DNA of 64,000 nt, taken from positions 62,001 to 126,000 of the IMG/VR virus record IMGVR_UViG_3300004151_000006; one strand, 5' to 3'. The notes below the pieces were generated by a model. The model did not search any database. It was not told the DNA's origin and saw only the letters and a program-made list of their open reading frames with translations. The position numbers were made by a program, and so were the translations under genes. This document shows, one piece after another, positions 21,171-35,967 of this stretch; positions within the stretch are counted from its first letter, which is position 1; every line of letters begins with the position of its first letter.

Positions 21171-22277
21171 GTGAACCATTTGGAGGTTATTGTGGAAAAT
21201 ATTTCACACGATTTAGTAAAACATAGAAAATTAAATATTATTATGGATGGACAATTTGGTTCTACTGGTAAAGGGAGTTTAGCTGCATGGTTGGGTACTA
21301 TATCACCAGTTGAAATATACGTAAGTAATCTTAGTCCAAATGCTGGACACACCTATGATTTACAAGATGGATATGGTCCTAGAGTAGTAAAACAATTACC
21401 TATTGGTGGGATTATTAATAAACGATCACAGATTTATTTATCTCATGGATCAATCATCGAACCAAAAGCTTTATTAAAGGAAATAGAAACATTTAATGTT
21501 GATAAAGACCGAATATGCATTGATCCTAGAGCTGCTATTGTTACCGATGAATGTAAAGCTTTAGAAAAAGATAATTCTTCTTCAGTAGCTAAGATAGCTA
21601 GTACACAGAGTGGTACTGGTGTAGCACTTAGTCAAAAAATCATGCGTAGTGCTAAATTAGCAGAAGATATTCCAGAGTTAAAAGATATGATACATGAATT
21701 TGATTTAATGGAACATTTACAATTAGGATCAACTGCAGTTATGGAGACATCACAGGGTTTTGATCTTGGATTAAATTATGGACTTAGTTATCCACATTGT
21801 ACCTCTAGAGATGTGACACCATCTCAATGTTTAGGTGATGCAAAAGTGCATCCAAAATTCTTAGGTAATGTATTTCTTACTTTAAGAACATATCCAATAC
21901 GAGTGGGTAATTTGAAAGTTGGAGATATTACATATGGTGAAAGTGGACCATTTTATCTAGATTCTAAAGAGCTGAGTTGGGAAGAATTGATGGTCACACC
22001 AGAGAAAACTACAGTCACTCAACGTATACGTAGAGTAGCTACATTTTCACCAACACAATTGAAAAGAACGATATATTACACTAAACCAAAACATATATTT
22101 TTGAATTTTATCAACTACATCTTAACTGAAGAATATATTGAAATTATAATAGATGCATTCAGACAAATAAAACAATTTCCAAGTTTATTAGGATTCGGTA
22201 GGAGTATACTTGAAATATCACGAGCAAGAAATTTAACAGAATCCAAAGATATCATGTATGCACAATTATGTAAATAA
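21171..22277 (+). CDS. purZ: PurZ-type succinylaminodeoxyadenylate synthetase (PurA homologue)
   Basis: DGQFGSTGKG (Ser in place of the PurA catalytic Asp), SPNAGHT, QGFDL..YPHCTSRD, RTYPIRV, TTVT.R.RR, FLNFINY; short ~360 aa form. Confidence 0.8.
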   Translation: MNHLEVIVENISHDLVKHRKLNIIMDGQFGSTGKGSLAAWLGTISPVEIYVSNLSPNAGHTYDLQDGYGPRVVKQLPIGGIINKRSQIYLSHGSIIEPKALLKEIETFNVDKDRICIDPRAAIVTDECKALEKDNSSSVAKIASTQSGTGVALSQKIMRSAKLAEDIPELKDMIHEFDLMEHLQLGSTAVMETSQGFDLGLNYGLSYPHCTSRDVTPSQCLGDAKVHPKFLGNVFLTLRTYPIRVGNLKVGDITYGESGPFYLDSKELSWEELMVTPEKTTVTQRIRRVATFSPTQLKRTIYYTKPKHIFLNFINYILTEEYIEIIIDAFRQIKQFPSLLGFGRSILEISRARNLTESKDIMYAQLCK

Positions 22278-22330: not shown

Positions 22331-23020
22331 ATGACTATTAATTTAGATAAGTATTTTCATATAGATGAAAAGAAGAATGCTACTATCTTTCTTGGTGATA
22401 AGTTAGAGATATTCATTCCCACTAGATATATCAACTATGGTCTTCTCTCCCATGATAAATCCCTTAATGCTTTAGGTATCTTTGAAATGAAGATCAATGA
22501 CACTATTACAGGTGGACTCTGTCTCCCAGCTAAACTCAGTATGATACCAAAAGAAACTTATACAACTACTATTGATGAAGTGTCTTACATGGTAGCTACA
22601 TTTCAAAAACATGATACCTTCATTGAGAATATGACGGTCATTAAAAATGATGCTTTAGGATATGTCCTTTGGAAAGAATTCATCTCTTTAGGTAATTTAC
22701 CTAAGTTCATTACGTATGATAATATTGGTACCCTCTTTGATCTCATTGCTCAAGTATGTGGTATCAATTTTGGTGTCAACCATGCAGTCTTTGAAATGAT
22801 CTATGCTCACCTCTATAGAGATCCAGATGATATCACTAAAGAGTATCGACTTTCTAAAATGAATAAACCACCAGTCTTCATTGAACTCAGGAATGTGAGT
22901 TATGGACCAGATACTACTACGGCTAAGATGCTTGGTAGTTATTGGAATGATGGTATCAATAGTAGTCTAGTCAATGCTTCAGATAAGGTCTCTGAGTTAG
23001 ACCACACCCTATTTAATTAA
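22331..23020 (+). CDS. conserved phiKZ-like hypothetical protein
   Basis: AAGGAG RBS, 229 aa. Confidence 0.6.
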   Translation: MTINLDKYFHIDEKKNATIFLGDKLEIFIPTRYINYGLLSHDKSLNALGIFEMKINDTITGGLCLPAKLSMIPKETYTTTIDEVSYMVATFQKHDTFIENMTVIKNDALGYVLWKEFISLGNLPKFITYDNIGTLFDLIAQVCGINFGVNHAVFEMIYAHLYRDPDDITKEYRLSKMNKPPVFIELRNVSYGPDTTTAKMLGSYWNDGINSSLVNASDKVSELDHTLFN

Positions 23021-23396: not shown

Positions 23397-23405
23397 AGTT
23401 AAGAC

Positions 23406-23437
23406 AGATGGGAGACGGCCTAGGCCGTCTCCCATCT
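23406..23437. repeat. 32-bp perfect palindrome (no loop)
   Basis: AGATGGGAGACGGCCT|AGGCCGTCTCCCATCT, followed by an early promoter motif at 23445-23465. Confidence 0.95.
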
Positions 23438-23526
23438 CTGTTTCACATATATATTATTTATTTGATGAATTTTAATGATGATCCAATTACTATTTGATTG
23501 GACCATTTACCAAGGAGGCCTTTGCG

Positions 23527-23664
23527 GTGCACAATACCTACAAACCCCAATGGTGTCTCAAGGCCGGATACACTGTTGTTTCAGCAACAATGCATTCCCG
23601 TACAAAAAACAAACAAACCCACATAAGATTTCTATTCAAAATAAAAATTACTATTACAATTTGA
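23527..23664 (+). CDS. small basic 45-aa protein (not in ORF track)
   Basis: AAGGAGG 8 nt before GTG; MHNTYKPQWCLKAGYTVVSATMHSRTKNKQTHIRFLFKIKITITI; lies between promoter and terminator. Confidence 0.5.
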   Translation: MHNTYKPQWCLKAGYTVVSATMHSRTKNKQTHIRFLFKIKITITI

Positions 23665-23708
23665 TGCTCCCCGAGAGGGGAGCATCTAGCATATCTTTTT
23701 TTTGTTTT
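23663..23708 (+). terminator. intrinsic terminator with GNRA loop
   Basis: GATGCTCCCC-GAGA-GGGGAGCATC then a T-run. Confidence 0.7.
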
Positions 23709-23856
23709 TATATAAAATCTAGTAGCATTAAAGATGCTGATCATTTTATTTCAAATATATATAATTCATTTGATCTAATCTTTAGATCTGTGTCTATGGA
23801 GATCACATTTGGTTCACTATATACTCATCCCAATAGGGATAAGGACGGATAGCATC

Positions 23857-24213
23857 ATGTCGACTCCCATCAAGCAGTTTTTCATTCACCGTTTGGATAT
23901 CTTCAACTGGGTATGTTTCATGGTGATATTACTCACCGTAGAGTATATCTCGTACTGTATTGCACCAGACAATATACTCGTATTCATTGGTACAATTTCA
24001 GTAATCATGTTTCTCATATGTCTTTGGTTTACTTATCTTAGATCACCTAGACGAACATATCGACCCAAATGGATCAAGACATATCTTGAGTTCATGGGAT
24101 ACCATATTTATTCTGAGACAGAACTTAAAATCATCTTTCAATGCAACATAGTGGTGTGTATCATCACAATTGTTATGTTAGTAGAATGTATCTATTTCTC
24201 ATATCGTCCGTAA
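23857..24213 (+). CDS. membrane protein (3 TM)
   Basis: Three hydrophobic segments; followed by a 13-bp stem at 24225-24255. Confidence 0.6.
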   Translation: MSTPIKQFFIHRLDIFNWVCFMVILLTVEYISYCIAPDNILVFIGTISVIMFLICLWFTYLRSPRRTYRPKWIKTYLEFMGYHIYSETELKIIFQCNIVVCIITIVMLVECIYFSYRP

Positions 24214-24513
24214 TCAAGCACAGGGGAGAGGCACCCATCTCCTGGGTGCCTCTCCTGACCTGGCTGTTCACCCCAAACAAGGAAGCTCATGGTGCCCACA
24301 TACACCATAGGTATAAGACAGCTGATCCTCATCTATCCTACACCCATAGGATATTTGAGATGAAATATATTTAGATCTATATTTTTTTTTCATGATGAAA
24401 GAAATAAACTATATACTGTGAGTGATCCCATTATATATTCAAAACATCTTATGTCTATAGATACTCACACTAGTAATAGTGTTTACTATATCATTTGGAA
24501 AGGAGTCAAGCAA

Positions 24514-25305
24514 ATGGATGCATCTTGGAAATTTGTAGTGGAGGCTATGTCTGTAGTCGATGGTCGTATGATCAAAGGACTCAAGCCTGATGCTCAAGGA
24601 TACTACCATGATATCCCTTTGATGGGACTAGGTATGTGTGCTCGTAGTGGTATCTATTACAATCCTAAACCTATCATCGATGCTATCCGTTTACCAAAGA
24701 GTACATTCAATATGAAACTCACTGATGGTAATCTCTTTGGATGTATCAATCATCCTCCTACCTTTAAGAAAGAAGATATCCCTCTCATGTTAGAGATAGA
24801 TCAAAAAGAAGTCTCTCATCATTTCAAAAAGATCTATAGTGGTGATCTAGGTAATGACACTGGACTCATCTTAGGATGTCTTCGTCCTTGGGGTCCCTAT
24901 GGTCAGTACTTAGAGACCTCACTGCAAGATGAACATGTCAATACCTCATTCTCTGTACGATCATTGTGTAAACAGTATATGGAGCCCAACACTAGACGTA
25001 TGTGTCGTGATGTCGAGATCTTAGTGACGTTTGATTGGGTCAATGCTCCTGGATATAAAGAGGCTAGTAAACGCTATGTACCTGCTATGGAGAGTTACAC
25101 TATTGATATCATCCCTGAAGAGTTCATTGCTGCTGTAGAGATCTGTGGATGTGAGTCTATCAAAGACATTGATCTCATGAGAGTGTTTGGTATGAGTCAG
25201 ATCGAGATCGGTGAGATCCGTGGTGAGTATAGAGCTGGAAGAAAGTCATTCATTGGCACTGATGGGGATAGACATAGCTTGGTCCATGCACTGTTGGGAT
25301 GTTAG
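24514..25305 (+). CDS. prohead (head maturation) protease, phiKZ gp175-like
   Basis: GCINHP, VSHH, SFSVRSL, TFDWVNAPG motifs; candidate self-cleavage site AME-S; AAGGAG RBS. Confidence 0.85.
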   Translation: MDASWKFVVEAMSVVDGRMIKGLKPDAQGYYHDIPLMGLGMCARSGIYYNPKPIIDAIRLPKSTFNMKLTDGNLFGCINHPPTFKKEDIPLMLEIDQKEVSHHFKKIYSGDLGNDTGLILGCLRPWGPYGQYLETSLQDEHVNTSFSVRSLCKQYMEPNTRRMCRDVEILVTFDWVNAPGYKEASKRYVPAMESYTIDIIPEEFIAAVEICGCESIKDIDLMRVFGMSQIEIGEIRGEYRAGRKSFIGTDGDRHSLVHALLGC

Positions 25306-25313
25306 GAGGATAT

Positions 25314-26051
25314 ATGTTTAAAGTACCTAAGATGCTTGATGGTGAAATCGAATCACTCCCTGTAGATCCTTTGGAGATCCCAGAGCCTACACCAGAATCT
25401 ACTCCAATTCCAGTGAAGACAGAAGATTACAGTGACCAATATTTACATAGTCTCACTGATGCTAAACTCATCCCTACTAAAGCTCTCACTATTGAGCATA
25501 CTGATATCATGGGTCCTATGTCAAAGTGTCCAGTCTTTATCCATGAGCTCCAAGATGGGAGTCTGCATTGTATCGCATATGTGATAGGTCAGATCGGTGA
25601 TGTCAACGATTATCTTGATCTCATTGATATGATCACAGTACTACGTGAGCAAGATAAGATGCGAGTATATATTGATAGTCCTGGTGGATATGTGGCTACT
25701 GGAGCACATGTGGCTAGTGCTATGTCTTTGTGTAATGGTGAAGTCACTACTGTAGCAAGAGGTTTTTGTGCATCAGCTGCATCCCTCATGTGGTCAGCTG
25801 GACACAAACATCAACTCACCCCATTTTCTTTATTCATGTACCATATGAGTAGTCATGGTGATATGGGTAATAGCTTAGGTATCCGCAATCGTGCTGATGA
25901 TATGATCAGATATGTCAAGACTACATTACTCCGTGTACCTTTAGAAAAAGGTCATATCACTCCTGAAGAATTAGATCAGATTTGTATCAAAGGTGAAGAT
26001 CAATATATTGATGCAAAGACTATGTATCAGCGTCTTCGTAAAGGAGTCTAG
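25314..26051 (+). CDS. ClpP-like serine protease
   Basis: YIDSPGG, CASAASL (catalytic Ser), FMYHM (His), EDQYIDA; acidic Pro-rich N-terminus. Confidence 0.85.
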   Translation: MFKVPKMLDGEIESLPVDPLEIPEPTPESTPIPVKTEDYSDQYLHSLTDAKLIPTKALTIEHTDIMGPMSKCPVFIHELQDGSLHCIAYVIGQIGDVNDYLDLIDMITVLREQDKMRVYIDSPGGYVATGAHVASAMSLCNGEVTTVARGFCASAASLMWSAGHKHQLTPFSLFMYHMSSHGDMGNSLGIRNRADDMIRYVKTTLLRVPLEKGHITPEELDQICIKGEDQYIDAKTMYQRLRKGV

Positions 26052-26054
26052 TAT

Positions 26055-26825
26055 ATGAGTCAATCACCTTCACCATATGGGTTTTTAAAAGGATTGATGA
26101 TCAATATGGATGACATCCCTGCTGATCCTTTGGTAGTAGAAGAGACTCCCATTGAACCTATTGATACTCATCCTGATGAGACACCTGATATCACACATCG
26201 TGTAGATGGAGTCACTATAGGTACTGAGAGTATCTCATCTTTCTATCAATCATTTCAAATGGAAAAACAAGATCCACTCACTATAGAACAGAATGCTCTC
26301 AATACTCCTAGTAAAATGGGTATGTTCAACACTGTAAAACCCATGAATCACATACCCCAGATACGTACTACTGACCAGGTCAATTTCAGAGTATTCCTCA
26401 AAGCTCAACATGAATTTACAGATGAGTATATCACCAGGTTATGTAGATTCTTAGATAGTCGTACACCCAATCAAACTATCACATTTTATCTTGGTAATAG
26501 TTTATCATCTAGATACACCATGATCATTGGATCTGTCTTGTCATCTATCATGTCTTGTCCAGCTAAGACGATAGCTATTGCTGCTGGATGTTGTGGTGTA
26601 CCTGAGTCTATGATGTGGTGCTTTTGTCAGGAAAGACATATCGCTGAATATAGTGCACTCACTTTTGGTGGTACCAATCTCATCACCCACTATTCTTTTT
26701 ATAAATACTATTTAGAAGTCTGTTTTGAAAGAGCTGTGGAAGTGGGTATATTGAGTAAAGAGCAAGTGGATACTATTTGGAATGAAAATAAAGAGATCAT
26801 GATCACATATGTAGAACAGCAATAG
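26055..26825 (+). CDS. degenerate ClpP paralogue (ClpR-like, catalytic residues lost)
   Basis: TIAIAAGCCGVPESMMW aligns to TTVARGFCASAASLMW; LTFG replaces FMYH; acidic N-terminus. Confidence 0.6.
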   Translation: MSQSPSPYGFLKGLMINMDDIPADPLVVEETPIEPIDTHPDETPDITHRVDGVTIGTESISSFYQSFQMEKQDPLTIEQNALNTPSKMGMFNTVKPMNHIPQIRTTDQVNFRVFLKAQHEFTDEYITRLCRFLDSRTPNQTITFYLGNSLSSRYTMIIGSVLSSIMSCPAKTIAIAAGCCGVPESMMWCFCQERHIAEYSALTFGGTNLITHYSFYKYYLEVCFERAVEVGILSKEQVDTIWNENKEIMITYVEQQ

Positions 26826-26931: not shown

Positions 26932-27228
26932 ATGGCAAGTTATAATTTTAGCCTCCCCGGCCATTGCATGTCTTTCATTTCGAAGTTGCGGAAGCATCGT
27001 AATGACCCGCGTCGTTTGGTGGATTACATTCTTGTAGCCTTCGATACCACTGATCCTACCCATCCAAAGGAGCACCCCATGTGGGAGCATCTGGAGGAAG
27101 CCATTGCTGTCTGCAAGCAATATGGGTGGCAGTTCAGGACTATGTCCTGGAAGGATCAGGGGATCCAGGCTGTGGCAATATCCCCAGAAGAAGGATATTA
27201 CCATTCCAAGTTTCAACACAGCCATTAA
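26932..27228 (+). CDS. hypothetical protein
   Basis: AGGAG RBS; elevated GC. Confidence 0.65.
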   Translation: MASYNFSLPGHCMSFISKLRKHRNDPRRLVDYILVAFDTTDPTHPKEHPMWEHLEEAIAVCKQYGWQFRTMSWKDQGIQAVAISPEEGYYHSKFQHSH

Positions 27229-27254
27229 ACCTTCTAACCTAAACGAGGTATATC

Positions 27255-28136
27255 ATGCAGCGCATTATCACTCACTCCGGTAAGTTTCACGCTGACGAAA
27301 TCATTGCATGTGCCATCCTTCGCATGCTCAATCCACAGATCGAGATCATCCGTACCCGCGACACCAGCATCATCACCGACGATGATATCGCGGTCGACTT
27401 CGGCGGGATCTATGATCCCGAGAAGTATCGATTCGACCATCACCAAAAGGACGCCCCCAAGCGTCCCAATGGCAAGTCCTACTCCAGTGCCGGCATGGTC
27501 TGGAATTCCCCCCAGGTCCACTGCATGATGATGCAACTGGGCATGCCCAGCAATCTGCTCTCCGAAATCGTAGCTAAGGTTGATGAGAGCTTCATTGCCC
27601 ACATCGATGCGATCGACTCCGGGGAAGGATCTCTCGAAGGCTACAGTTTCAGCGCAGCCATCGGGTCCTTCAACACGTTCAATCTCCAGGATGGAGAAGA
27701 CGTGTGTTTCATGAAGGCCCTGGACTTTGCGCTGCAATTCCTGCCAAATATCATCCATGAGACTTATCTCCGCCTCAGTGAGGCGGAGTATGTCCGCGAT
27801 GCCGATACGACGTTCGATGGCAAGGTCATCGTCCTTGGTCGGGGGGTCCCATGGATCGAGACCGTCCTGACCGAGGCGAAGTTCGACAATGCCGAGTTTG
27901 TCATGTTCCCTCATATTGATGGGGTGACATGGAGACTCCAGGCCATCCCCAAGGAGATGGGGAGCTTCGAGAAGCGTCGAGCTTTGCCTGCCTCTTGGGG
28001 CGGATTGAATGGTCAAGACCTGGAATACGTCACCGGCGTGAAGGGTGCCGTGTTCTGTCACAAGGCCCTGTTCATTTGCGGTGCTAATAGCTTTGAAGCC
28101 ATGTTTGACATGGCTGGGTTGGCAGTGTCGCAGTAA
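27255..28136 (+). CDS. MYG1 (UPF0160) family DHH 3'-5' exonuclease
   Basis: THSGKFHADE, VDFGG.YD, FDHHQ, SSAGMVW, FCHKALF; markedly GC-rich. Confidence 0.9.
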   Translation: MQRIITHSGKFHADEIIACAILRMLNPQIEIIRTRDTSIITDDDIAVDFGGIYDPEKYRFDHHQKDAPKRPNGKSYSSAGMVWNSPQVHCMMMQLGMPSNLLSEIVAKVDESFIAHIDAIDSGEGSLEGYSFSAAIGSFNTFNLQDGEDVCFMKALDFALQFLPNIIHETYLRLSEAEYVRDADTTFDGKVIVLGRGVPWIETVLTEAKFDNAEFVMFPHIDGVTWRLQAIPKEMGSFEKRRALPASWGGLNGQDLEYVTGVKGAVFCHKALFICGANSFEAMFDMAGLAVSQ

Positions 28137-28143
28137 TTTATAT

Positions 28144-28177
28144 CTGCATGGGGGCCCATCCTTGGGCCCCCATGCAG
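28144..28177. terminator. 15-bp stem between convergent genes
   Basis: CTGCATGGGGGCCCA-TCCT-TGGGCCCCCATGCAG. Confidence 0.8.
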
Positions 28178-28190
28178 TACTGTGATTATT

Positions 28191-30221
28191 TTATTTTTTC
28201 ATTTCTTGGATCACCATATCTAAAGTCTGGGTTTGATCAGATAAGGTGTGTATAGCTTTTGTAGAATGTTGCATAGCTGTAAGATTTTGTTTAGCTATAT
28301 CTGCTGTAGAGATGATGAGTCTACCTATTTCTTCAGCAGTAGCAGATTGTTCTTCAGCAGCTATAGCAATGGATTGTATTTGACTAGTAGTACCATCAAT
28401 AAGAGTATAGATCTCAGAGAGTGTATCACCACCTATCTTGACACGTTTATCTATTTCATTGATAGCTGAAGCTACTTTCTCAACATAATTAATACTTTTT
28501 AATGTACTATCTTGAACAGTGGTAATGGTGGTTTCAATATCACGTGTAGCTACTTGTGTACGTTCTGCTAACTTTCTTACTTCATCAGCCACTACAGCAA
28601 AACCTTTACCAGCTTCTCCGGCGTGAGAACTTTCGATTGCCGCGTTAAGTGCTAATAAATTAGTCTGATCTGCAATATGTGAAATAGTTTCAATGATCTC
28701 ATTGATACCACCGACTTGATCACCTAATACATGAATATCATTTTTAAGGATGATAGCTAACTCTCGGATACCATTGATTTCACTGATGATAGTTTGAATA
28801 ACAGTAGTTCCATCATGTGCTTTCTGTTTAGCTATAGATGCTGATTCACTAGTGTGACTGCTATTTTTAGCTACTTCTAAGATGGTAGCATTCATTTCTT
28901 CTACTGCTACTGCTGTTTCATCCATCTGAGTAGATTGTGCTTCACTACCACGAGTAGATTGTTCTATTTGTGTGGATAAAGATTCAGTGTGATTAGCTAT
29001 CTCTCTGACTGTAGTGTCTAATTTGATAGCAGCTTGGTGGATACCATCTTTGAGTGCTTGCTCAGCAGCAGCTTTAAGCCGATTGACATCTGTGATATCT
29101 TGGATGAGTTCAATATATCCGATGGTATCACCATGTCTATTTTTGAGTATGGAAGTATCCACCATGTAATCATTTTCTGGTATGCCAGGTATATTGAAAT
29201 GGCATTTTGTATTACCTTGTTTACATTGTTTTACTGCGCAATCAGTTTCATTACAGATGGTAGTACCTAAAGATATACAAGCTTTTCCTATATAAGTTTC
29301 TTTATCAAGATGAAAAGTCTTGAGAGCATGATCATTAAGATATGTGATATATTTTTCATTACTGACTACCATGATAGGAAAACTAATAGAGTTCAATACA
29401 TTTTCATACCAATGAAGTTTATCCACTACTGTATCCAATGCTTTATTGAGATACTTTGATGTTTTACCTATTTCATCATCACTGTTGACCTGGAGCCTTG
29501 TAGTGAAATCACCTTGAGAAAAAATGATAGCTGCATTAAGTATCTTCTTTAAAGGTACACTGATCTTTTGTACAATGAAGATACTGATAGCTATACCAAT
29601 CATAAAAGATAAACCAAGTACAATCAATATAGTATCCATATCACGATTGACAATACGTTGTGTCTCTATCTTAGCTAGTGAAGTAGATTCTTTAGTATCT
29701 TTGATGATAGCTAAGATCTCATTGAACATTTGACCGTTGACACGATTTCCAACAGTATAACAATAATCAAAAGCATTTTGATATAAATCAAGATTATTAA
29801 GATCATTTTCCCATGTATGTATCATATCAAATATCTTATTGTTTTCTCTTTTAGCTTCATCTAAAGTGGTAGTGAATTTCTCCCATAATACCTTTTCTTT
29901 ATATCCTCTGGGTATAGTACTGAGTGTTTTGATTATTTCAGTATATTTATCTCTATGTAATTTGATATCCTCGTATTGTTTAGCTCTTTGTTCTTTAGTG
30001 ATATTTCTTTTAAGCAACATAGTCTGTGCTAACAATATTGATTGAAAATGATAGGGTAAAATATTGAGTGCTTCTAAACTTGGTAGATGTGTTTCTGTGA
30101 TAGTGCTGAGTGATTCCTCTGCATCCTGCATCCCAGTGTATCCTACTATCCCACTAATAGATGAAATACAGATCAGGGCCATAGTACCTATGATCAGTTT
30201 AAGTTTTAAAGAGATGTGCAT
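28191..30221 (-). CDS. methyl-accepting chemotaxis protein (TM-4HB sensor-TM-HAMP-PAS-MA)
   Basis: [12 protein letters not shown]...[21 protein letters not shown]; HAMP PLKKI...GDFT..DEIG; PAS-like segment; two TMs; AGGAGG RBS. Confidence 0.93.
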
Positions 30222-30290
30222 ACTACCTCCTATATATGTTGTGTGCGTATAATATCTGAGTCATCAATACATTGAAATCCATGAATATAC

Positions 30291-30311
30291 AAATATATAT
30301 TACATATAGGA
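30291..30311 (+). promoter_or_regulatory. phiKZ-type early promoter
   Basis: AAATATATATTAC. Confidence 0.6.
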
Positions 30312-30338
30312 TACAACCATTTATTTAGAGAGGTATGT

Positions 30339-30653
30339 ATGTCTGAAAGATCTCGTATTTGTTTTACTGTTGATAGTGATCTGGTAGAGCACATCATCAT
30401 GCGGCTAGAAGCTACCTGGGGAATTAAAAATGCTTCAGTGAATCCCATTTTCTCAGGTACTCATGGTGAGTACCTAAAGATGCTTCGAAAGAAGAAAAAG
30501 ATGACCCAACAACAATTAGCTACACTTTCTGGGGTACATCAAGTGAATATCACAATGATGGAACGTAACAAACGTACTATTGGTTTAAAGAGTTCAATAG
30601 CTTTAGGTGAAGCCCTTGGTGTCAACCCGTTATCATTTCTTATGGAGGAATAG
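30339..30653 (+). CDS. XRE-family HTH regulator
   Basis: LKMLRKKKKMTQQQLATLSGVHQVNITMMERNKR. Confidence 0.88.
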   Translation: MSERSRICFTVDSDLVEHIIMRLEATWGIKNASVNPIFSGTHGEYLKMLRKKKKMTQQQLATLSGVHQVNITMMERNKRTIGLKSSIALGEALGVNPLSFLMEE

Positions 30654-33113
30654 ATGATTTCATTACCTATCGATAAATACTATCCGGAGATCATGGCTTC
30701 TATCAAAGATTATCCGGTGACACTCATTGTGGGTGAGACTGGGTCTGGTAAATCAACTCGTGTTCCTCGGATGTGCATTGAAGATGGTCATTCTTGTATC
30801 ATCACTCAACCCAGACGTTTGGCTGCTATCAATGTGGCTAAGCGTGTGGCAGATGAACTCAATGGTGACTTGGGTGGTGTGGTGGGTTATTCCACCAGAT
30901 ACGAAAAGGAGTATTCAAAATATACTACTTGTTTATTTTGTACTGATGGTCTTGGTCTGGTGAGAGAGATGTTGACTGAACATAAGTTTGACATCCTCAT
31001 CTTAGATGAAGTCCATGAATTTAATTTATCTATTGAAGCCTTGTTGGCTTGGATCAAATATCAGTTGGATCATGGTGAAATGAATCGTAGATATGTACTC
31101 ATGTCAGCCAGTGTAGATGTGATTAAATTTAAAGAATATTTTGGTGAATATCTCCATATTTTAGAGGTTGAAGGTCGTACCTTTCCAGTGATAGATCACT
31201 CTGAAAAATATAGTAGAGTGATCTGTGATGAGCATGATGTATTTAAAGTGGTTGTTAATTTGATACATGAAGAAAAAGATATCCTTATGTTTTTGCCTGG
31301 TAAAAAAGAGATCTCTGATTATAAGCGTAGATTCAATGATGCTGGTTTAAATGCAGAGGTATTAGTGTTACATGGTGATATGACATATAAAGAACAGTGC
31401 TTAGCATTTGGAGAATATGGTAGACCTAGGTTAATCTTATCTACTAATGTGGCACAGACTTCAATTACACCAGATGTTGATGTGGTATTGGATTCTGAAT
31501 TGGAAAAGTGTATATTGATACGTGATGGTGTAGAAGGTCTTTATCTGCAACGTATCTCCAAAGCTGATGTGCAGCAACGAATGGGTCGTGCAGGTAGAAC
31601 CAAAGTGGGTGAATATATTTCATTTATTCAGGTAGCCAATTTAGATGTGGAAAGTTTGGTACAAAATGATTATGCCACACCCGAGATAGAACGGTTGTAT
31701 CTTGATCATGTATATCTTAAATTGTGTGCTGCTGGATTGGATCCGCTTCAGTTGGATTTCTTTCACAATCCCAATATCCGCCAATTGGCAATGGCTAAAA
31801 AAGGTCTTTATCAATTGGGTTGTATCACTTTTGATAGTGAAATTACGGAATTAGGTAAAATACTGGTGAAATATCCACTGGATGCACGTTATGCTAAGAT
31901 CCTTTATTTAGCATCTGAATATGGTGTCTTTGAACCCTGTCTTCAGATCATATGCTGTTTGATGTCAAATGTGAGATATAAATATCCCAGAAGAGATGTT
32001 TCTTCTGATCTTGAAGCATACGGTACATATTTACAATATACAAATAATAAATCTAATGATGAGTTGAAGCGTGCTGAGCTCAATCTTAAAGCACATTATG
32101 GTATGATAGAAATGTACAAACGCATGTTTAAAGATAAAAATATTGAAATCAATAATGATAATACACATGATGATTGGAATAAAATGCATGATACAATTGA
32201 ACGTATCTTCGTATCTTGTATGTTAGATAATTTATGGGCTACAGGTAATATCACATATGGAAATTTTTATCATTTGGATTCATTGAATGTCAAACAGAAT
32301 GTGTGTACTGAAGCAGATATTGTAGGTAGATCAGTTAATAAAAATTATAACAATACACACAATATGGTATGTTGTGTTGGTATCCCCATCGACATTCAAA
32401 TAAAAACTAGATATGGATACAATACTTTAAGACTTTTGAATTTCATTATTCCTTATCGTGATATTTGGATGGAATGGTTCCCTGATAAATTTAAATTGGA
32501 TTTGGAATTTAAAGAGAGTTTCCAATATAATGTGGTGGGGTATCCAATTATGAAATGTGGTAATATTAAATTAGGAAATACTCAATATAGTGGTTTAGAT
32601 TTTCATATTGTAGATAAATGCCCCACAGCATTACAGTACATTAAGTTCTTTAATATGCGCATAGCACAATATTTGAATTCATTTAAAGATGAATATAATG
32701 TAGTCCCTTCAGATAAATCTGTTGAACAATTGAATATACTCATCCTTGGTATGTTGAAAACATATGCACGTTGGAATAATTTTGAAATGTGGGATCCATG
32801 GACTAATCTTAGAATTTATCGTGGTAAACAACCCAATCAATATGGTGAAGTTAACCATTTTGCAGAATATAAAGAATTTACAGATGCTCGAGATGATATT
32901 CCTGAAGTAAAAGTGGATTATAAACAATATATTCCAGTGCCTAAAATGATTCCTAAAAAGGAGGTGCAACTTTGGCATTCTGTTAGTGCTGGAAAAGTAA
33001 TGTGTCCTAAAGGACATGTCATGAAGATGTCAAAAGCATTGGATCATGATCCAACTAAGTTATATTGCCCTATCTGTAAGACTGAGGGCAAGATCACTGG
33101 TCTTGGATCTTGA
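30654..33113 (+). CDS. HrpA/HrpB-like DEAH-box helicase with C-terminal zinc ribbon
   Basis: GETGSGKST, TQPRRLAA, DEVHE, MSAS, FLPG, STNVAQTSIT, QRMGRAGR; CPKGH...CPIC. Confidence 0.9.
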   Translation: MISLPIDKYYPEIMASIKDYPVTLIVGETGSGKSTRVPRMCIEDGHSCIITQPRRLAAINVAKRVADELNGDLGGVVGYSTRYEKEYSKYTTCLFCTDGLGLVREMLTEHKFDILILDEVHEFNLSIEALLAWIKYQLDHGEMNRRYVLMSASVDVIKFKEYFGEYLHILEVEGRTFPVIDHSEKYSRVICDEHDVFKVVVNLIHEEKDILMFLPGKKEISDYKRRFNDAGLNAEVLVLHGDMTYKEQCLAFGEYGRPRLILSTNVAQTSITPDVDVVLDSELEKCILIRDGVEGLYLQRISKADVQQRMGRAGRTKVGEYISFIQVANLDVESLVQNDYATPEIERLYLDHVYLKLCAAGLDPLQLDFFHNPNIRQLAMAKKGLYQLGCITFDSEITELGKILVKYPLDARYAKILYLASEYGVFEPCLQIICCLMSNVRYKYPRRDVSSDLEAYGTYLQYTNNKSNDELKRAELNLKAHYGMIEMYKRMFKDKNIEINNDNTHDDWNKMHDTIERIFVSCMLDNLWATGNITYGNFYHLDSLNVKQNVCTEADIVGRSVNKNYNNTHNMVCCVGIPIDIQIKTRYGYNTLRLLNFIIPYRDIWMEWFPDKFKLDLEFKESFQYNVVGYPIMKCGNIKLGNTQYSGLDFHIVDKCPTALQYIKFFNMRIAQYLNSFKDEYNVVPSDKSVEQLNILILGMLKTYARWNNFEMWDPWTNLRIYRGKQPNQYGEVNHFAEYKEFTDARDDIPEVKVDYKQYIPVPKMIPKKEVQLWHSVSAGKVMCPKGHVMKMSKALDHDPTKLYCPICKTEGKITGLGS

Positions 33114-33720: not shown

Positions 33721-35967
33721 ATGTTGATGTTTGAATCAGATTTTACAAGACCGTTTTCTATTAAGTTGGGCCATGATGTATCTAGGACATTTTATCCTAG
33801 ATATCATGCCAATACAAAAAATGATAGTTTTATAAGAGTATGTATGATATTGAAAAATATGGGCGTAGAAAACCATTTATTCCCTTTAGGTATTTATCAT
33901 CATGAATTATTAGATGTAGATCCAAGATCTAATGATCTCTCAGATGAACAAAGACTCATGATAATGACAGAGATTAAGATTAATCCGTGGTATTATTTTC
34001 GAGAGGTAGTGAGAATCCCCACTACTGGTGGTGAACCAATCCCATACATTTTATCGAGAGCAAACTTAGCTCTTACGTGGTGTTATTACAATGGTATTGA
34101 TGTTGGCTTAGTACAACCTCGTCAAACTGGTAAAACTATTGGTACACAGGCTATCATGTCACATGTTATGTATTTCTTAGGATTTCACTTTGAAATAGCC
34201 ATGCTCACTAAAGATGGTGCCTTAATTAAAGACAACGTAAGACGTCTTCGGGATATTAAAGAAACATTACCAAAATGGATGATACTTAAAAATTACAATG
34301 GTAAAGATGAAGATAATAAAGAAGGACTTTCTTATACTTTTTTAGAAAATATCTATAAAACTTTTACCAATGCTATTGATGATGCAGGTGCTGATAAACT
34401 CGGTCGTGGTATGACTTCTCCCACTCAACATTGGGATGAAATTGCTTTCTTTAGATATATCTGGACAACATTTCCTGCTGCAGTGGCAGCTACTGGTGCT
34501 GCTCGAAAGAATGCTGCTGAACGTGGACTTCCTCATGCTAACATATATACCACTACTGCAGGTAACCCAGATAAAAGATCTGGTAAATTTGCTATGGATC
34601 TTTTTTTAGATTCATGTTTATTCACTGAGAAACTTTATGATTGTAAAGATCTTAATGATCTTCATAATACCGTAATTAAAAATAGTGTCCAAGGTACGAA
34701 GTCTGTCTATTGTGTATATTCACATAGACAATTGGGTTTCACTGATGATTGGCTTAGAGAACAGATTTTACGTACTAAAGCTACACAAGAAAAAGTGGAT
34801 AGAGATTATTTGAATTTATGGAAATCTTCTTCTGATGATGGACCTATTCCACCAGATTTATTAGATAAAATCAATAGAAATGTTATTGAACCCCTGTATA
34901 GTGAAGTGAAAGATAGATACATTCTTAATTGGTATCTCTCTGAACAAATGGTCAATTCTGAAGAATTTAAAAATCGTACGCTTATCGCTGGGCTAGATAG
35001 TTCAGAGATGATAGGTAGAGATTTTACTACATTTGTCATTCTTGATTCGTATGACATGAGTGTAGTTGGTACACTTCGGTGTAATGATTCTAATGTTATT
35101 AATCTTGGTAATCGCATAGCACAGATTATGTTGAAGTATAGAAAGATGATATTAGTACCAGAATGTAAATCTACTGGAGTAGCTATTGTAGATGCTATCA
35201 TCAATGTACTCAAAGAAAATGGTATCAATCCTTGGCAACGTATCTTTAATTTGGCAGTACAAAAGAAAGATGAAAGGGAGTTTGAAAATTTTAATATTCA
35301 TACAGAACCCACTGAAGGTCTTAATAAGAAGTTGTTTGGATTTAGGACTACTGGAGGTACTGGTTTATTTAGTCGTAATATGCTTTATAAATCCACAATG
35401 CTAAAAGCTATATATCTTAACTATTCCCGTGTCCATGATGAGATGCTCATTAAAGAATTCAATGGACTTCGTACTAAAAATGGTAGAATAGATCACAATG
35501 AAGATAGCCATGATGATATGATCATCTCTTATTTATTGGCTTGTTTCTTTATATTCTTTGGTAAGAATCTTCATCATTATGGGATCAAACCAGAACTCTT
35601 TTTACATAAAATTACCAATGATGAAGATGGTGTGGATAAGTATAAAAAACAAGAACAATTGGAAGTTCGTAGTCATATAGCCCAATTAGAACATGCTGTC
35701 AGAAGATCAACTTCGCATCTTGTACGTATGAGTTACGAACGTGAACTCAACGAAATAAAGAGATATCTTGATGATGGGATCATTGATGTAAAACCTATTG
35801 CCACTACTCAGTTTAAACGTGATAGTGAATTGGTGTCTACTTTTAATAAACCCGATACTGAGCAAGCAGTTAACTTATTATCTAGTGTATACACTGCCAA
35901 TAATATGAATACTTCAAAATACCAATATCCTCAATATAGGGTAGGCTATGGTGGCATAGTCAATTGA
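33721..35967 (+). CDS. terL: terminase large subunit, phiKZ-type
   Basis: NPWYYFREVVR, QPRQTGKT (Walker A), WDEIAF (Walker B), TTTAG, GLDSSE, RIDH...HDD nuclease motifs. Confidence 0.9.
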   Translation: MLMFESDFTRPFSIKLGHDVSRTFYPRYHANTKNDSFIRVCMILKNMGVENHLFPLGIYHHELLDVDPRSNDLSDEQRLMIMTEIKINPWYYFREVVRIPTTGGEPIPYILSRANLALTWCYYNGIDVGLVQPRQTGKTIGTQAIMSHVMYFLGFHFEIAMLTKDGALIKDNVRRLRDIKETLPKWMILKNYNGKDEDNKEGLSYTFLENIYKTFTNAIDDAGADKLGRGMTSPTQHWDEIAFFRYIWTTFPAAVAATGAARKNAAERGLPHANIYTTTAGNPDKRSGKFAMDLFLDSCLFTEKLYDCKDLNDLHNTVIKNSVQGTKSVYCVYSHRQLGFTDDWLREQILRTKATQEKVDRDYLNLWKSSSDDGPIPPDLLDKINRNVIEPLYSEVKDRYILNWYLSEQMVNSEEFKNRTLIAGLDSSEMIGRDFTTFVILDSYDMSVVGTLRCNDSNVINLGNRIAQIMLKYRKMILVPECKSTGVAIVDAIINVLKENGINPWQRIFNLAVQKKDEREFENFNIHTEPTEGLNKKLFGFRTTGGTGLFSRNMLYKSTMLKAIYLNYSRVHDEMLIKEFNGLRTKNGRIDHNEDSHDDMIISYLLACFFIFFGKNLHHYGIKPELFLHKITNDEDGVDKYKKQEQLEVRSHIAQLEHAVRRSTSHLVRMSYERELNEIKRYLDDGIIDVKPIATTQFKRDSELVSTFNKPDTEQAVNLLSSVYTANNMNTSKYQYPQYRVGYGGIVN

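What the first reader, a model, noticed from the sequence alone, without database searches (positions are those of the whole stretch)
24514..26825. Prohead protease followed by an active ClpP and a catalytically dead ClpP paralogue
Seen: a three-gene operon. The second gene has an intact ClpP Ser/His; the third aligns to it but has CCGVPES for CASAAS and LTFG for FMYH. Both have acidic Pro-rich N-terminal extensions, and the third has a GTE-S site; the protease itself has AME-S and GCE-S. Established: phiKZ gp175 cleaves after S/A/G-X-E, and ClpP/ClpR heteromers occur in cyanobacteria and plastids. Inference: a ClpP/ClpR-like heteromeric protease, possibly head-packaged, matured by the head protease, and either clearing scaffold peptides or injected into the host.
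Basis: partly seen in the sequence, partly recalled or inferred. Interest (0 to 1): 0.65.

Follow-up and report, generated by a model that had tools for sequence, protein, structure and literature searches.

The report
Phage head protease, ClpP, dead ClpP
A freshwater giant phage carries, next to its capsid-maturation protease, an active ClpP peptidase and an inactive copy of it. The copy founds an unannotated protein family, and it carries a conserved cut site for the capsid protease, so the pair is probably built into the phage head.

Summary
Three tightly packed + strand genes encode:
- an S80 (phiKZ gp175-type) prohead protease, 24514-25305;
- a ClpP with its Ser/His intact, 25314-26051 (the true start is 5 codons after the 25299 ATG);
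- a 256-aa protein with no Pfam or PHROG match, 26055-26825.

The third protein is a catalytically dead paralogue of the neighbouring ClpP.
- Its AF2 model (residues 100-256, pLDDT above 90) matches ClpP structures best.
- Profile-profile comparison with partner ClpPs gives 99.3% probability, E 1.8e-20.
- The catalytic Ser aligns to Val/hydrophobic residues and the His to Gly, followed by a 9-residue deletion.

It founds a family of about 100 clusters (50% identity level), all from metagenomes. Wherever the contig reaches far enough, the gene order is S80-ClpP-X-terminase. At least 13 members, 12 library proteins and one IMG/VR contig, are natural ClpP-X fusions.

The family's variable acidic N-terminus contains a conserved [G/S/A]-x-E-[S/A]-[F/L] motif, the S80 cleavage signature. 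It occurs in 64 of 76 members against 7.3 expected.

Best reading: a ClpP/pseudo-ClpP heteromer targeted to the prohead and trimmed by the head protease. Its role there (clearing peptides or being ejected into the host) is inference. No virion or expression data exist. This window's ClpP itself lacks a canonical site.

The parts
24514..25305 (+). S80 (phiKZ gp175-type) prohead maturation protease, 263 aa. Catalytic candidates are H80 (24751-24753), S147 (24952-24954) and D174 (25033-25035).
   Evidence: Pfam PF20034 E 8e-32 and phrog_3014 E 6e-35. The start is set by AAGGAG at 24500-24505 and by homologues that begin at the same Met. H/S/D are invariant in A7, including Ea35-70. The triad is as reported for SPN3US gp245 (PMC5694885).
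25084..25155 (+). Two conserved C-terminal [G/A]-x-E sites of the protease, candidate autoprocessing sites: A191-M-E193|S (25084-25092) and G212-C-E214|S (25147-25155).
   Evidence: E193 and E214 are invariant in 6 diverse S80 proteins. C-terminal autoprocessing is reported for phiKZ gp175 and SPN3US gp245 (PMC5694885). Cleavage here is inferred.
25314..26051 (+). ClpP-family serine peptidase, 245 aa. It has an acidic Pro-rich N-terminal extension of about 70 aa. Ser154 lies at 25773-25775 and His177 at 25842-25844 (S159/H182 if counted from the 25299 ATG).
   Evidence: Pfam PF00574 E 1.7e-14 and phrog_1827 E 1e-28. The profile matches solved ClpPs at E 5e-15, with Ser and His aligned. Ser and His are invariant in 17 partner domains. 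The start is set by AGGAGG at 25304-25309 and by homologues that begin MFKVPKML. It has no S/A/G-x-E site.
26055..26228 (+). Predicted N-terminal propeptide of X (residues 1-58). It is acidic and Pro-rich and ends in G56-T57-E58|S59 (26220-26231).
   Evidence: pLDDT is about 50-65. Composition is given. The P3 column is G/S/A in 68 of 70 and P1 is Glu in 67 of 70. The motif is present in 64 of 76 members against 7.3 expected. Cleavage is inferred.
26055..26825 (+). X: a catalytically dead ClpP paralogue (pseudo-ClpP), 256 aa, founding an unannotated family. The ClpP-fold domain spans residues about 100-256 (26352-26822). Val182 (26598-26600) replaces the Ser and Gly205 (26667-26669) replaces the His. 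Glu184 (26604-26606) is near-invariant and specific to the family.
   Evidence: No Pfam or PHROG hit. AF2 model with pLDDT 82 overall and above 90 for residues 100-256. Foldseek top hits are ClpP in the PDB (E 5e-5, TMt 0.5-0.62) and phage ClpPs in BFVD (E 3.5e-8). hhalign against partner ClpPs gives 99.3%.
22331..23020 (+). Virion structural protein (phrog_2926), the conserved upstream neighbour of the module.
   Evidence: phrog_2926 E 1e-50. The same family lies directly upstream of S80 in L008 and L013.
26932..33113 (.). Lineage-specific insertion between X and the terminase. It holds a small ORF, a MYG1-family exonuclease (27255-28136 +, GC 54%), a methyl-accepting chemotaxis protein (28191-30221 -), an HTH regulator (30339-30653 +) and a DEAD/Helicase_C protein (30654-33113 +).
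   Evidence: Pfam and PHROG hits. In L008, L011, L012 and L013 the terminase directly follows X.
33721..35967 (+). Terminase large subunit, the conserved downstream end of the head module.
   Evidence: phrog_2 E 6.5e-43 and phrog_32359 E 6e-40.

Best explanation
The three genes form a head-assembly module of an uncultured phiKZ-related giant phage. I propose the following mechanism.

1. The ClpP and its inactive paralogue X (an ancient tandem duplicate) assemble into one heteromeric ClpP-type particle. Fusions fix a 1:1 ratio, so the likeliest form is one active ring stacked on one dead ring rather than mixed heptamers.
2. The acidic, disordered N-terminal extension of X acts as a capsid-targeting propeptide. 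In some relatives the ClpP has one too.
3. The S80 prohead protease removes it after Glu58 of the conserved [G/S/A]-x-E-[S/A]-[F/L] site, as it does for the capsid protein propeptide and for its own C-terminus.
4. Inside the maturing head, with no ATP or unfoldase, the particle most plausibly works as a peptidase. It would shorten the unstructured propeptide and core fragments left by S80 so that they can leave the shell.

**Shown:** homology, fold, loss of the catalytic residues, conserved synteny, fusions, conserved motif.
**Inferred:** complex formation, cleavage by S80, packaging, and the peptide-clearing role.
For: - **Dead paralogue.** AF2 model plus Foldseek hits to ClpP. hhalign against partner ClpPs gives 99.3%, E 1.8e-20, with Ser -> Val, His -> Gly and a 9-residue deletion. 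The dead positions hold family-wide.
- **Active partner.** Ser and His are invariant in 17 partner ClpPs and align to solved ClpP active sites.
- **Functional coupling.** The order S80-ClpP-X is kept in all relatives whose contig reaches far enough, down to about 20-30% identity. At least 13 members encode ClpP and X as one polypeptide: 12 library representatives and L008, an uninterrupted 424-aa ORF under table 11. The complex prediction scored 0.40 against a best control of 0.00, graded weak support; at least 78% of contacts agreed between runs and partner pLDDT was at least 75.
- **Head context.** The module sits between a virion structural protein and TerL.
- **S80 substrate.** The motif is present in 64 of 76 X N-termini against 7.3 expected. 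In the fusions it lies in the ClpP-X linker and often also before the ClpP domain. The same extended pattern occurs at the protease's conserved C-terminal sites and four times in the first 200 aa of this phage's major head protein.
- **Literature.** S/A/G-x-E specificity and long N-terminal targeting propeptides are documented for phiKZ, 201phi2-1 and SPN3US (PMC5694885).
- **No unfoldase.** The phage genome has no Clp-type AAA_2 domain.
Against: - There is no virion proteomics, no N-terminal sequencing and no RNA data. Only DNA runs from freshwater metagenomes hold the sequence.
- This window's ClpP has no canonical S/A/G-x-E site.
- One relative's ClpP (L013) has no N-terminal extension at all, so ClpP would have to enter the head by binding X.
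- The complex prediction is only 'weak support' and could reflect the model's memory of ClpP rings.
- The best PHROG for the ClpP is annotated 'ATP-dependent protease, other', not head.
- Its nearest cultured relatives, XacN1 and Xoo-sp13, place ClpP beside ligase and primase.
- A comparative study proposed that jumbo-phage ClpPs act against host proteins (PMC7824862).
- A ClpP barrel of about 300 kDa inside a DNA-filled head has no precedent that I know of.
Confidence: 0.55

Rival explanations
1. A cytoplasmic, host-directed protease. The phage ClpP, tuned by the dead subunit X, docks to host ClpX/ClpA/ClpC and redirects host proteolysis during infection. Its position beside the head protease would be an accident of gene order, and the G-x-E motif would serve another purpose or time activation late in infection.
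For: phrog_1827 is annotated 'ATP-dependent protease'. The closest cultured ClpPs lie among replication genes. PMC7824862 proposes an anti-host role for jumbo-phage ClpP. The phage has no Clp unfoldase of its own, so it would have to use the host's. This window's ClpP lacks a canonical S80 site.
Against: The position between a virion protein/S80 and TerL is kept across a deep clade. The S80-type motif is conserved in an otherwise unconserved N-terminus of X and in the fusion linkers. A motif with Glu at P1 does not fit ClpP's own specificity (established knowledge).
Confidence: 0.2
2. An assembly or scaffold role. X, with or without ClpP, is mainly a structural or core component of the prohead, a protease fold recruited as scaffold. 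This would parallel the protease-scaffold pairs of lambda (C/Nu3) and the ClpP-type prohead proteases of other phages. It would be degraded or expelled at maturation rather than kept as an enzyme complex.
For: Secondary PHROG hits of the ClpP are ClpP-type 'head maturation proteases' (phrog_1684 and phrog_94, E about 1e-17). No scaffold has been identified in phiKZ-like phages (PMC5694885). X is dead yet strongly conserved. The context is a head module.
Against: X has only one conserved cleavage site and a compact, well-conserved globular domain, whereas scaffolds are typically cut into small pieces. Ser and His of the partner ClpP are strictly conserved, which argues for retained catalysis.
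Confidence: 0.15
3. X is not dead but has a new function. It would be a ClpP/crotonase-fold enzyme with a new active site built from the family-specific near-invariant residues (Glu184, Arg194, Tyr199, Trp188).
For: Glu184 is present in 67 of 70 members and lies two residues after the former Ser position. Several other X-specific residues are near-invariant. Crotonases appear among the fold hits.
Against: The ClpP hits are better than the crotonase hits. Cys180 is shared with the partner ClpPs, so it is ancestral. The loop after the former His is deleted. No ligand or CoA-binding features were identified.
Confidence: 0.07

Closest known systems
ClpP/ClpR heteromers of cyanobacteria and plastids (and ClpP1P2 of mycobacteria and Listeria as two-ring heteromers)
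   Same: An active ClpP subunit is paired with a paralogue of the same fold that has lost the Ser-His-Asp triad. The two genes are co-encoded.
   Different: The origin is independent. X is closest to its own neighbouring phage ClpP (E 1.8e-20) and barely detectable against cellular ClpPs (E at least 0.4). No AAA+ partner is encoded. X carries a capsid-protease-type propeptide, the setting is a phage head module, and natural ClpP-X fusions exist.
phiKZ gp175 / SPN3US gp245 (MEROPS S80) prohead proteases and their propeptide-bearing head proteins
   Same: The protease family is the same, with a conserved H/S/D triad and conserved C-terminal x-E sites. X has an N-terminal propeptide ending in S/A/G-x-E, like the inner-head and ejection proteins of those phages (PMC5694885).
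   Different: The cultured phiKZ-like phage checked (Ea35-70) has no ClpP or X after the protease. tblastn with two X members found nothing in 50,697 deposited phage records.
Stand-alone phage ClpPs (phrog_1827; XacN1 ORF177, Xoo-sp13_177, CR3/CR9-like phages)
   Same: The ClpP subfamily is the same, at 29-33% identity.
   Different: Those genes are single copies beside DNA ligase and primase. They have no dead paralogue and no adjacent head protease.
ClpP/S49-type prohead proteases of HK97/lambda-like phages (phrog_94, phrog_1684; lambda gpC)
   Same: A ClpP-fold peptidase is encoded within a head-gene cluster.
   Different: In those phages the ClpP-fold enzyme is the sole maturation protease and is often fused to the scaffold or capsid protein. 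Here a herpesvirus/T4-type S80 protease is also present, and the ClpP is paired with a pseudo-enzyme.
T4 internal proteins and Alt with capsid-targeting sequences
   Same: A short or long N-terminal targeting peptide is removed after Glu by the prohead protease, which leaves cargo protein in the head.
   Different: The cargo here would be an oligomeric self-compartmentalised peptidase. Targeting is inferred, not shown.

Membership tests
Peptidase S80 (phiKZ gp175-type prohead protease) | Sequence match to the family model above its curated threshold | tested here: met
   PF20034 at 110.7 bits against a cut-off of 23.4, E 8e-32; phrog_3014 at E 6e-35.
Peptidase S80 (phiKZ gp175-type prohead protease) | His/Ser/Asp catalytic triad | tested here: met
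   H80, S147 and D174 are invariant in A7, including Ea35-70. Spacing is comparable to SPN3US gp245 H77/S153/D178 (PMC5694885).
Peptidase S80 (phiKZ gp175-type prohead protease) | Cleavage after Glu in S/A/G-x-E and C-terminal autoprocessing | not testable with these tools
   Conserved candidate sites at E193 and E214. Actual cleavage needs biochemistry.
ClpP (MEROPS S14) - gene 2 | ClpP domain by sequence | tested here: met
   PF00574 at 54.6 bits against a cut-off of 20.2. The profile matches solved ClpPs at E 5e-15.
ClpP (MEROPS S14) - gene 2 | Catalytic Ser and His, plus Asp | tested here: met
   Ser and His are invariant in 17 partner domains and align to the ClpP Ser and His. The third acidic residue is only approximately conserved (Asp or Glu near the 'GEDQY' position), so that part is inconclusive.
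ClpP (MEROPS S14) - gene 2 | Works with a Clp AAA+ unfoldase | tested here: not met
   The 286.7-kb phage genome has no AAA_2 domain, while the controls matched in 14 of 14 genomes. Use of a host unfoldase cannot be tested here.
ClpP (MEROPS S14) - gene 2 | Double-heptamer barrel | not testable with these tools
   The chain limit of the complex tool allowed only a 1:1 pair.
ClpR-type inactive ClpP subunit - gene 3 | ClpP fold | tested here: met
   AF2 model with pLDDT above 90 over residues 100-256. Foldseek top hits are ClpP. The Atlas structure hits are CLP_protease clusters.
ClpR-type inactive ClpP subunit - gene 3 | Loss of the catalytic triad | tested here: met
   Ser -> Val182 (hydrophobic family-wide), His -> Gly205 (His is not among the commonest residues listed for that column), and a 9-residue deletion after it.
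ClpR-type inactive ClpP subunit - gene 3 | Co-assembles with an active ClpP | tested here: inconclusive
   Complex prediction scored 0.40 against a best control of 0.00, graded 'weak support'. At least 13 natural ClpP-X fusions and invariant adjacency support it indirectly.
ClpR-type inactive ClpP subunit - gene 3 | Orthology with cyanobacterial/plastid ClpR | tested here: not met
   X is closest to the adjacent phage ClpP lineage (E 1.8e-20). Its profile gives E at least 0.4 against solved cellular ClpPs. The resemblance to ClpR is convergent.
Prohead-protease-processed head cargo (capsid-targeting propeptide type) | N-terminal propeptide ending in the protease's motif | tested here: met
   G56-T-E58|S59. 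The motif is present in 64 of 76 family members against 7.3 expected.
Prohead-protease-processed head cargo (capsid-targeting propeptide type) | Presence of the trimmed protein in virions | not testable with these tools
   There is no isolate and no proteome. Only DNA runs hold the sequence.

The most novel reading that the evidence does not exclude
A giant-phage clade packages a complete self-compartmentalised peptidase into its capsid as cargo: an active ClpP ring plus a dead ClpP ring, loaded through a cleavable targeting peptide. The particle either acts as an ATP-independent 'clean-up' protease inside the maturing head or is delivered with the DNA to attack host proteins at the very start of infection. 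Either would be a new class of capsid-internal enzyme, and an independent invention of the ClpP/ClpR principle in viruses.
Probability: 0.3. Interest if true: 0.85.

Novelty: new variant of a known kind. Interest (0 to 1): 0.66.

Why it matters
- **An unannotated family gets a fold, an origin and a testable partner.** About 100 clusters at the 50% identity level have no Pfam or PHROG model. The family looks like a virus-specific, independently evolved counterpart of the ClpP/ClpR pseudo-enzyme arrangement.
- **It bears on open questions in giant-phage head assembly.** No scaffold is known for these phages, and it is unclear how the large mass of propeptides is cleared. The module adds a second, unrelated protease system to the prohead.
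- **It offers a compact experimental system.** The conserved targeting and cleavage peptide, together with the natural fusions, means three genes could be co-expressed in E. coli to study capsid targeting and pseudo-protease function.

Tried and rejected
- **Family scans of gene 3** against Pfam and PHROGs found nothing.
- **PDB sequence searches** with the 4-sequence and 70-sequence X profiles gave only noise or ClpP at E at least 0.4.
- **DNA and protein searches of the 50,697 deposited phage records.** blastn of the operon found no match. tblastn with the window X and with the distant member P0085 found no match. tblastn with the L008 fusion also returned 'No match' although its ClpP half should have hit. 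I treat that call as uninformative.
- **IMG/VR scans.** The single-protein query found nothing. The 20-sequence alignment gave one locus, L008.
- **Shallow hhalign** (4 against 3 sequences) gave only 19% probability. It was superseded by the deeper profiles.
- **A bare S/A/G-x-E count** as evidence was rejected. It is at chance in each protein, and 65 extended-motif matches are scattered over the genome. Only the family-wide positional conservation counts.
- **Reading the 25299 ATG or the 24418 GTG as starts** was rejected on Shine-Dalgarno position and homologue N-termini.
- **Cys180 as a new nucleophile** was rejected, because the Cys is shared with the active partner ClpPs.
- **PDB sequence search with the S80 profile** gave no hit.
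- **Host assignment through the chemoreceptor gene** gave only a 32% partial match to a Bacillus genome, which is not informative.
- **Complex prediction** gave 'weak support' only.
- **Read laying was not used**, because no RNA run holds the sequence.
Full report
**1. Where we are.** The window is bases 62001-126000 of a 286,688-bp virus record that IMG/VR classes as having inverted terminal repeats and being 100% complete. GC is 35%. Only DNA runs labelled freshwater metagenome hold the sequence, and no RNA run does. The S80 protease's nearest cultured relatives are phiKZ-like Erwinia phages of the Ea35-70 group, at 32% identity. The phage is therefore a distant, uncultured relative of the phiKZ-like giant phages.

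**2. The three genes.** ORFs on the + strand lie at 24418/24514-25305, 25299/25314-26051 and 26055-26825. Shine-Dalgarno sequences (AAGGAG, AGGAGG, AAGGAG) and the N-termini of homologues fix the starts at 24514, 25314 and 26055. The genes are separated by 8 and 3 nt. No terminator-like site lies between them.

- **Gene 1** is a Peptidase_S80 / 'head maturation protease' (E 8e-32 and 6e-35). H80, S147 and D174 are invariant across six proteins down to 29% identity. This matches the H/S/D triad described for SPN3US gp245 (PMC5694885). That fits the C-terminal autoprocessing reported for this protease family.
- **Gene 2** is a ClpP (PF00574 E 1.7e-14; phrog_1827 E 1e-28). A 17-sequence profile of it and its orthologues hits solved ClpPs at E 5e-15, with the catalytic Ser and His aligned. 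Both residues are invariant.
- **Gene 3** (called X here) has no Pfam or PHROG hit.

**3. X is a dead ClpP paralogue.**

*Finding relatives.* Direct BLASTP of X against gene 2 is weak (E 2e-4 over 47 residues). The word search found only three relatives. The exhaustive profile search found 100 cluster representatives at E up to 1e-3, 41 of them at E up to 1e-30.

*Fold.* With a 70-sequence alignment, AlphaFold2 gives mean pLDDT 82, above 90 for residues 100-256. Foldseek's best PDB matches are ClpP chains (3q7h, 4u0h, 2cby, 5dzk; E 5e-5 to 2e-4, TM 0.5-0.62 by target), followed by crotonases. In BFVD the best matches are phage ClpPs (E 3.5e-8). The ESM Atlas structure search agrees.

*Homology to the neighbour.* Profile-profile comparison of the X family with the partner ClpP domains gives 99.3% probability, E 1.8e-20, over 202 columns. 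HMMs of each family cross-hit the other's domain in the fusion proteins.

*Loss of the active site.* The alignment places the catalytic Ser opposite Val182, which is I/F/V/L/M across the family. It places the His opposite Gly205, which is G/S/T/E/C across the family. A 9-residue deletion removes the conserved loop that follows the His.

*Still under selection.* X is clearly constrained: G147, G178, C180, E184, W188, R194, Y199 and G200 are near-invariant. Cys180 is shared with the active ClpPs. Glu184 is specific to X.

**4. The pair is a conserved unit.** Every relative whose contig reaches far enough has the same order.

- The three close relatives carry S80-ClpP-X.
- Distant ones carry S80-ClpP-X-TerL (L012, L013), ClpP-X-TerL at a contig edge (L011), and phrog_2926-S80-[ClpP-X fusion]-TerL (L008).
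- At least 13 members encode ClpP and X in one polypeptide: 12 library representatives plus L008. In L008 this is an uninterrupted 424-aa ORF under the standard bacterial code, so the fusions are not gene-calling artefacts.
- In the window, a 6-kb insertion separates X from TerL (33721-35967). It holds a small ORF, a MYG1 exonuclease, a chemoreceptor, an HTH protein and a DEAD-box helicase.
- The complex prediction for ClpP(66-250) plus X(59-256) scored 0.40 against 0.00 for the best of three controls. The tool grades this as weak support. Runs agreed in at least 78% of contacts and partner pLDDT was at least 75. Because ClpP rings are well represented among solved structures, this may be memory of the fold.

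The fusions are the stronger argument. They also imply equimolar amounts, which an odd-numbered mixed ring cannot accommodate. A ring of seven ClpP stacked on a ring of seven X is therefore the simplest architecture. This is inference.

**5. The cleavage motif.** Counting S/A/G-x-E alone means nothing: each protein has about three expected by chance, and ClpP has none. The GTE-S of X is different.

- It lies in a disordered, acidic, Pro-rich and otherwise unconserved N-terminus.
- It aligns with a column set that reads G/S/A (68 of 70) - x - Glu (67 of 70) - S/A/N/G - F/L.
- In an alignment-free test, 64 of 76 family members have [GSA]xE[SAGNTH][FLIMYW] upstream of the fold, against 7.3 expected from shuffled N-termini.
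- In the fusions the motif sits in the linker between the ClpP and X domains, and frequently also ahead of the ClpP domain.
- The same extended pattern is seen at the protease's own two conserved C-terminal sites.
- It also occurs four times in the first 200 residues of this phage's major head protein (G000 138579-140924, phrog_3231).

Cleavage after Glu in S/A/G-x-E, and N-terminal propeptides of 10 to more than 160 residues that act like T4 capsid-targeting sequences, are documented for phiKZ, 201phi2-1 and SPN3US (PMC5694885). The sequence evidence therefore says that X is a substrate of the S80 protease, and by implication a prohead component.

The ClpP partner is less uniform.

- L011 has VGTE-SL at residue 23 and L012 has AATE-EF at 42.
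- L013's ClpP has no extension at all.
- This window's ClpP has a 70-residue extension with no canonical site. The only near match is EIE-SL at residues 11-15, and it is not conserved.
- ClpP may therefore ride in on X. This is inference.

**6. Mechanism and rivals.**

*Best-supported reading (confidence about 0.55):* a ClpP/pseudo-ClpP heteromer is targeted to the prohead and trimmed by S80. The phage encodes no Clp-type unfoldase and a capsid interior has no ATP. The most economical role is therefore ATP-independent degradation of the unstructured propeptide and core fragments that S80 leaves. Ejection into the host is the more exciting alternative.

*Rivals:*
- A cytoplasmic, host-directed ClpP, as proposed generally for jumbo-phage ClpPs (PMC7824862), and consistent with the replication-gene context of the closest cultured ClpPs.
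- A scaffold-like structural role for X.
- A new enzymatic function for X built around Glu184.

None of these is excluded without proteomics or biochemistry.

**7. Comparison with the known, and novelty.** The module works like ClpP/ClpR, but X is not a ClpR orthologue. It derives from the phage ClpP lineage.

- Stand-alone phage ClpPs are known, as are S80 proteases and ClpP-type prohead proteases.
- I found no description of an S80-ClpP-pseudoClpP module in three full-text searches.
- I found no X homologue in 50,697 deposited phage records with two tblastn queries.
- The cultured phiKZ-like phage checked has no ClpP after its protease.

I rate it a new variant of a known kind: a virus-specific, independently evolved pseudo-ClpP partner with a capsid-protease propeptide.

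**8. Limits.** All support is computational. Absence from cultured phages rests on tblastn sensitivity. The fold model's N-terminal 100 residues are low-confidence. The habitat label comes from coded run records.

Noticed in passing
window 21171-22277 (+): An adenylosuccinate-synthetase-like gene whose best PHROG is phrog_1211, annotated as the PurZ-type '2-amino' adenylosuccinate synthetase (E 7e-56; Pfam Adenylsucc_synt E 3e-21). It could mean 2-aminoadenine (Z base) DNA in a giant phage. Companion genes (DatZ, MazZ) were not looked for.
   Followed up: no
window 28191-30221 (-): A full-length methyl-accepting chemotaxis protein (4HB_MCP, HAMP, PAS and MCPsignal domains) encoded by the phage. 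The 60%-identity relative L006 also carries MCPsignal genes at the same place. The best cellular match found was only 32% to a Bacillus genome.
   Followed up: partly
window 27255-28136 (+) and 26932-27228: A MYG1-family exonuclease gene (PF03690, E 2e-66) with GC 54% and GC3 69%, in a 35% GC genome. The small ORF before it has 48.5% GC. The region looks like a recent foreign insertion between X and the terminase.
   Followed up: partly
G000:C1:138579-140924 (-), outside the window (locus L014): The major head protein gene (phrog_3231) has 56% GC against 35% for the genome. Its first 200 residues carry four sites of the extended protease motif.
   Followed up: partly
G000:C1:249142-249564 (+), outside the window (locus L005): A second, weak Peptidase_S80 match (E 1.6e-5, below the family cut-off). 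It is reminiscent of the diverged protease paralogue gp117 described in SPN3US.
   Followed up: no
window 16623-18674 (+): A 683-aa protein of unknown function that matches phrog_1735 at E 9e-252. It is 47% identical to proteins of Caulobacter phiCbK-like phages and is present in 538 phage records. It is remarkably conserved for a hypothetical protein.
   Followed up: partly
protein P0075 (771 aa): A three-part relative: an unknown N-terminal domain of about 225 aa, then ClpP, then X. Motif sites VGNE-GF at residue 22 and TGSE-SL at 238 lie before the ClpP domain, and QGVE-AF lies in the linker.
   Followed up: partly
L013 4441-4998: In this distant relative the partner ClpP has no N-terminal extension (it starts at the conserved PYCPV motif). 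X keeps an N-terminal extension of about 70 residues, but the strict-motif scan found no site in it (P0085).
   Followed up: partly
window 23400-24500: About 1.1 kb between the virion-protein genes and the protease holds only short, overlapping, hydrophobic ORFs and has no family hits. The corresponding region in L006 is larger and holds YagK_YfjJ_C-domain genes, so this is a variable spot.
   Followed up: no
(query L008:5197-6468): tblastn of the L008 ClpP-X fusion against the phage records returned 'No match', although the window ClpP alone hits 986 records. This is probably a tool or filter effect and should not be read as absence.
   Followed up: no
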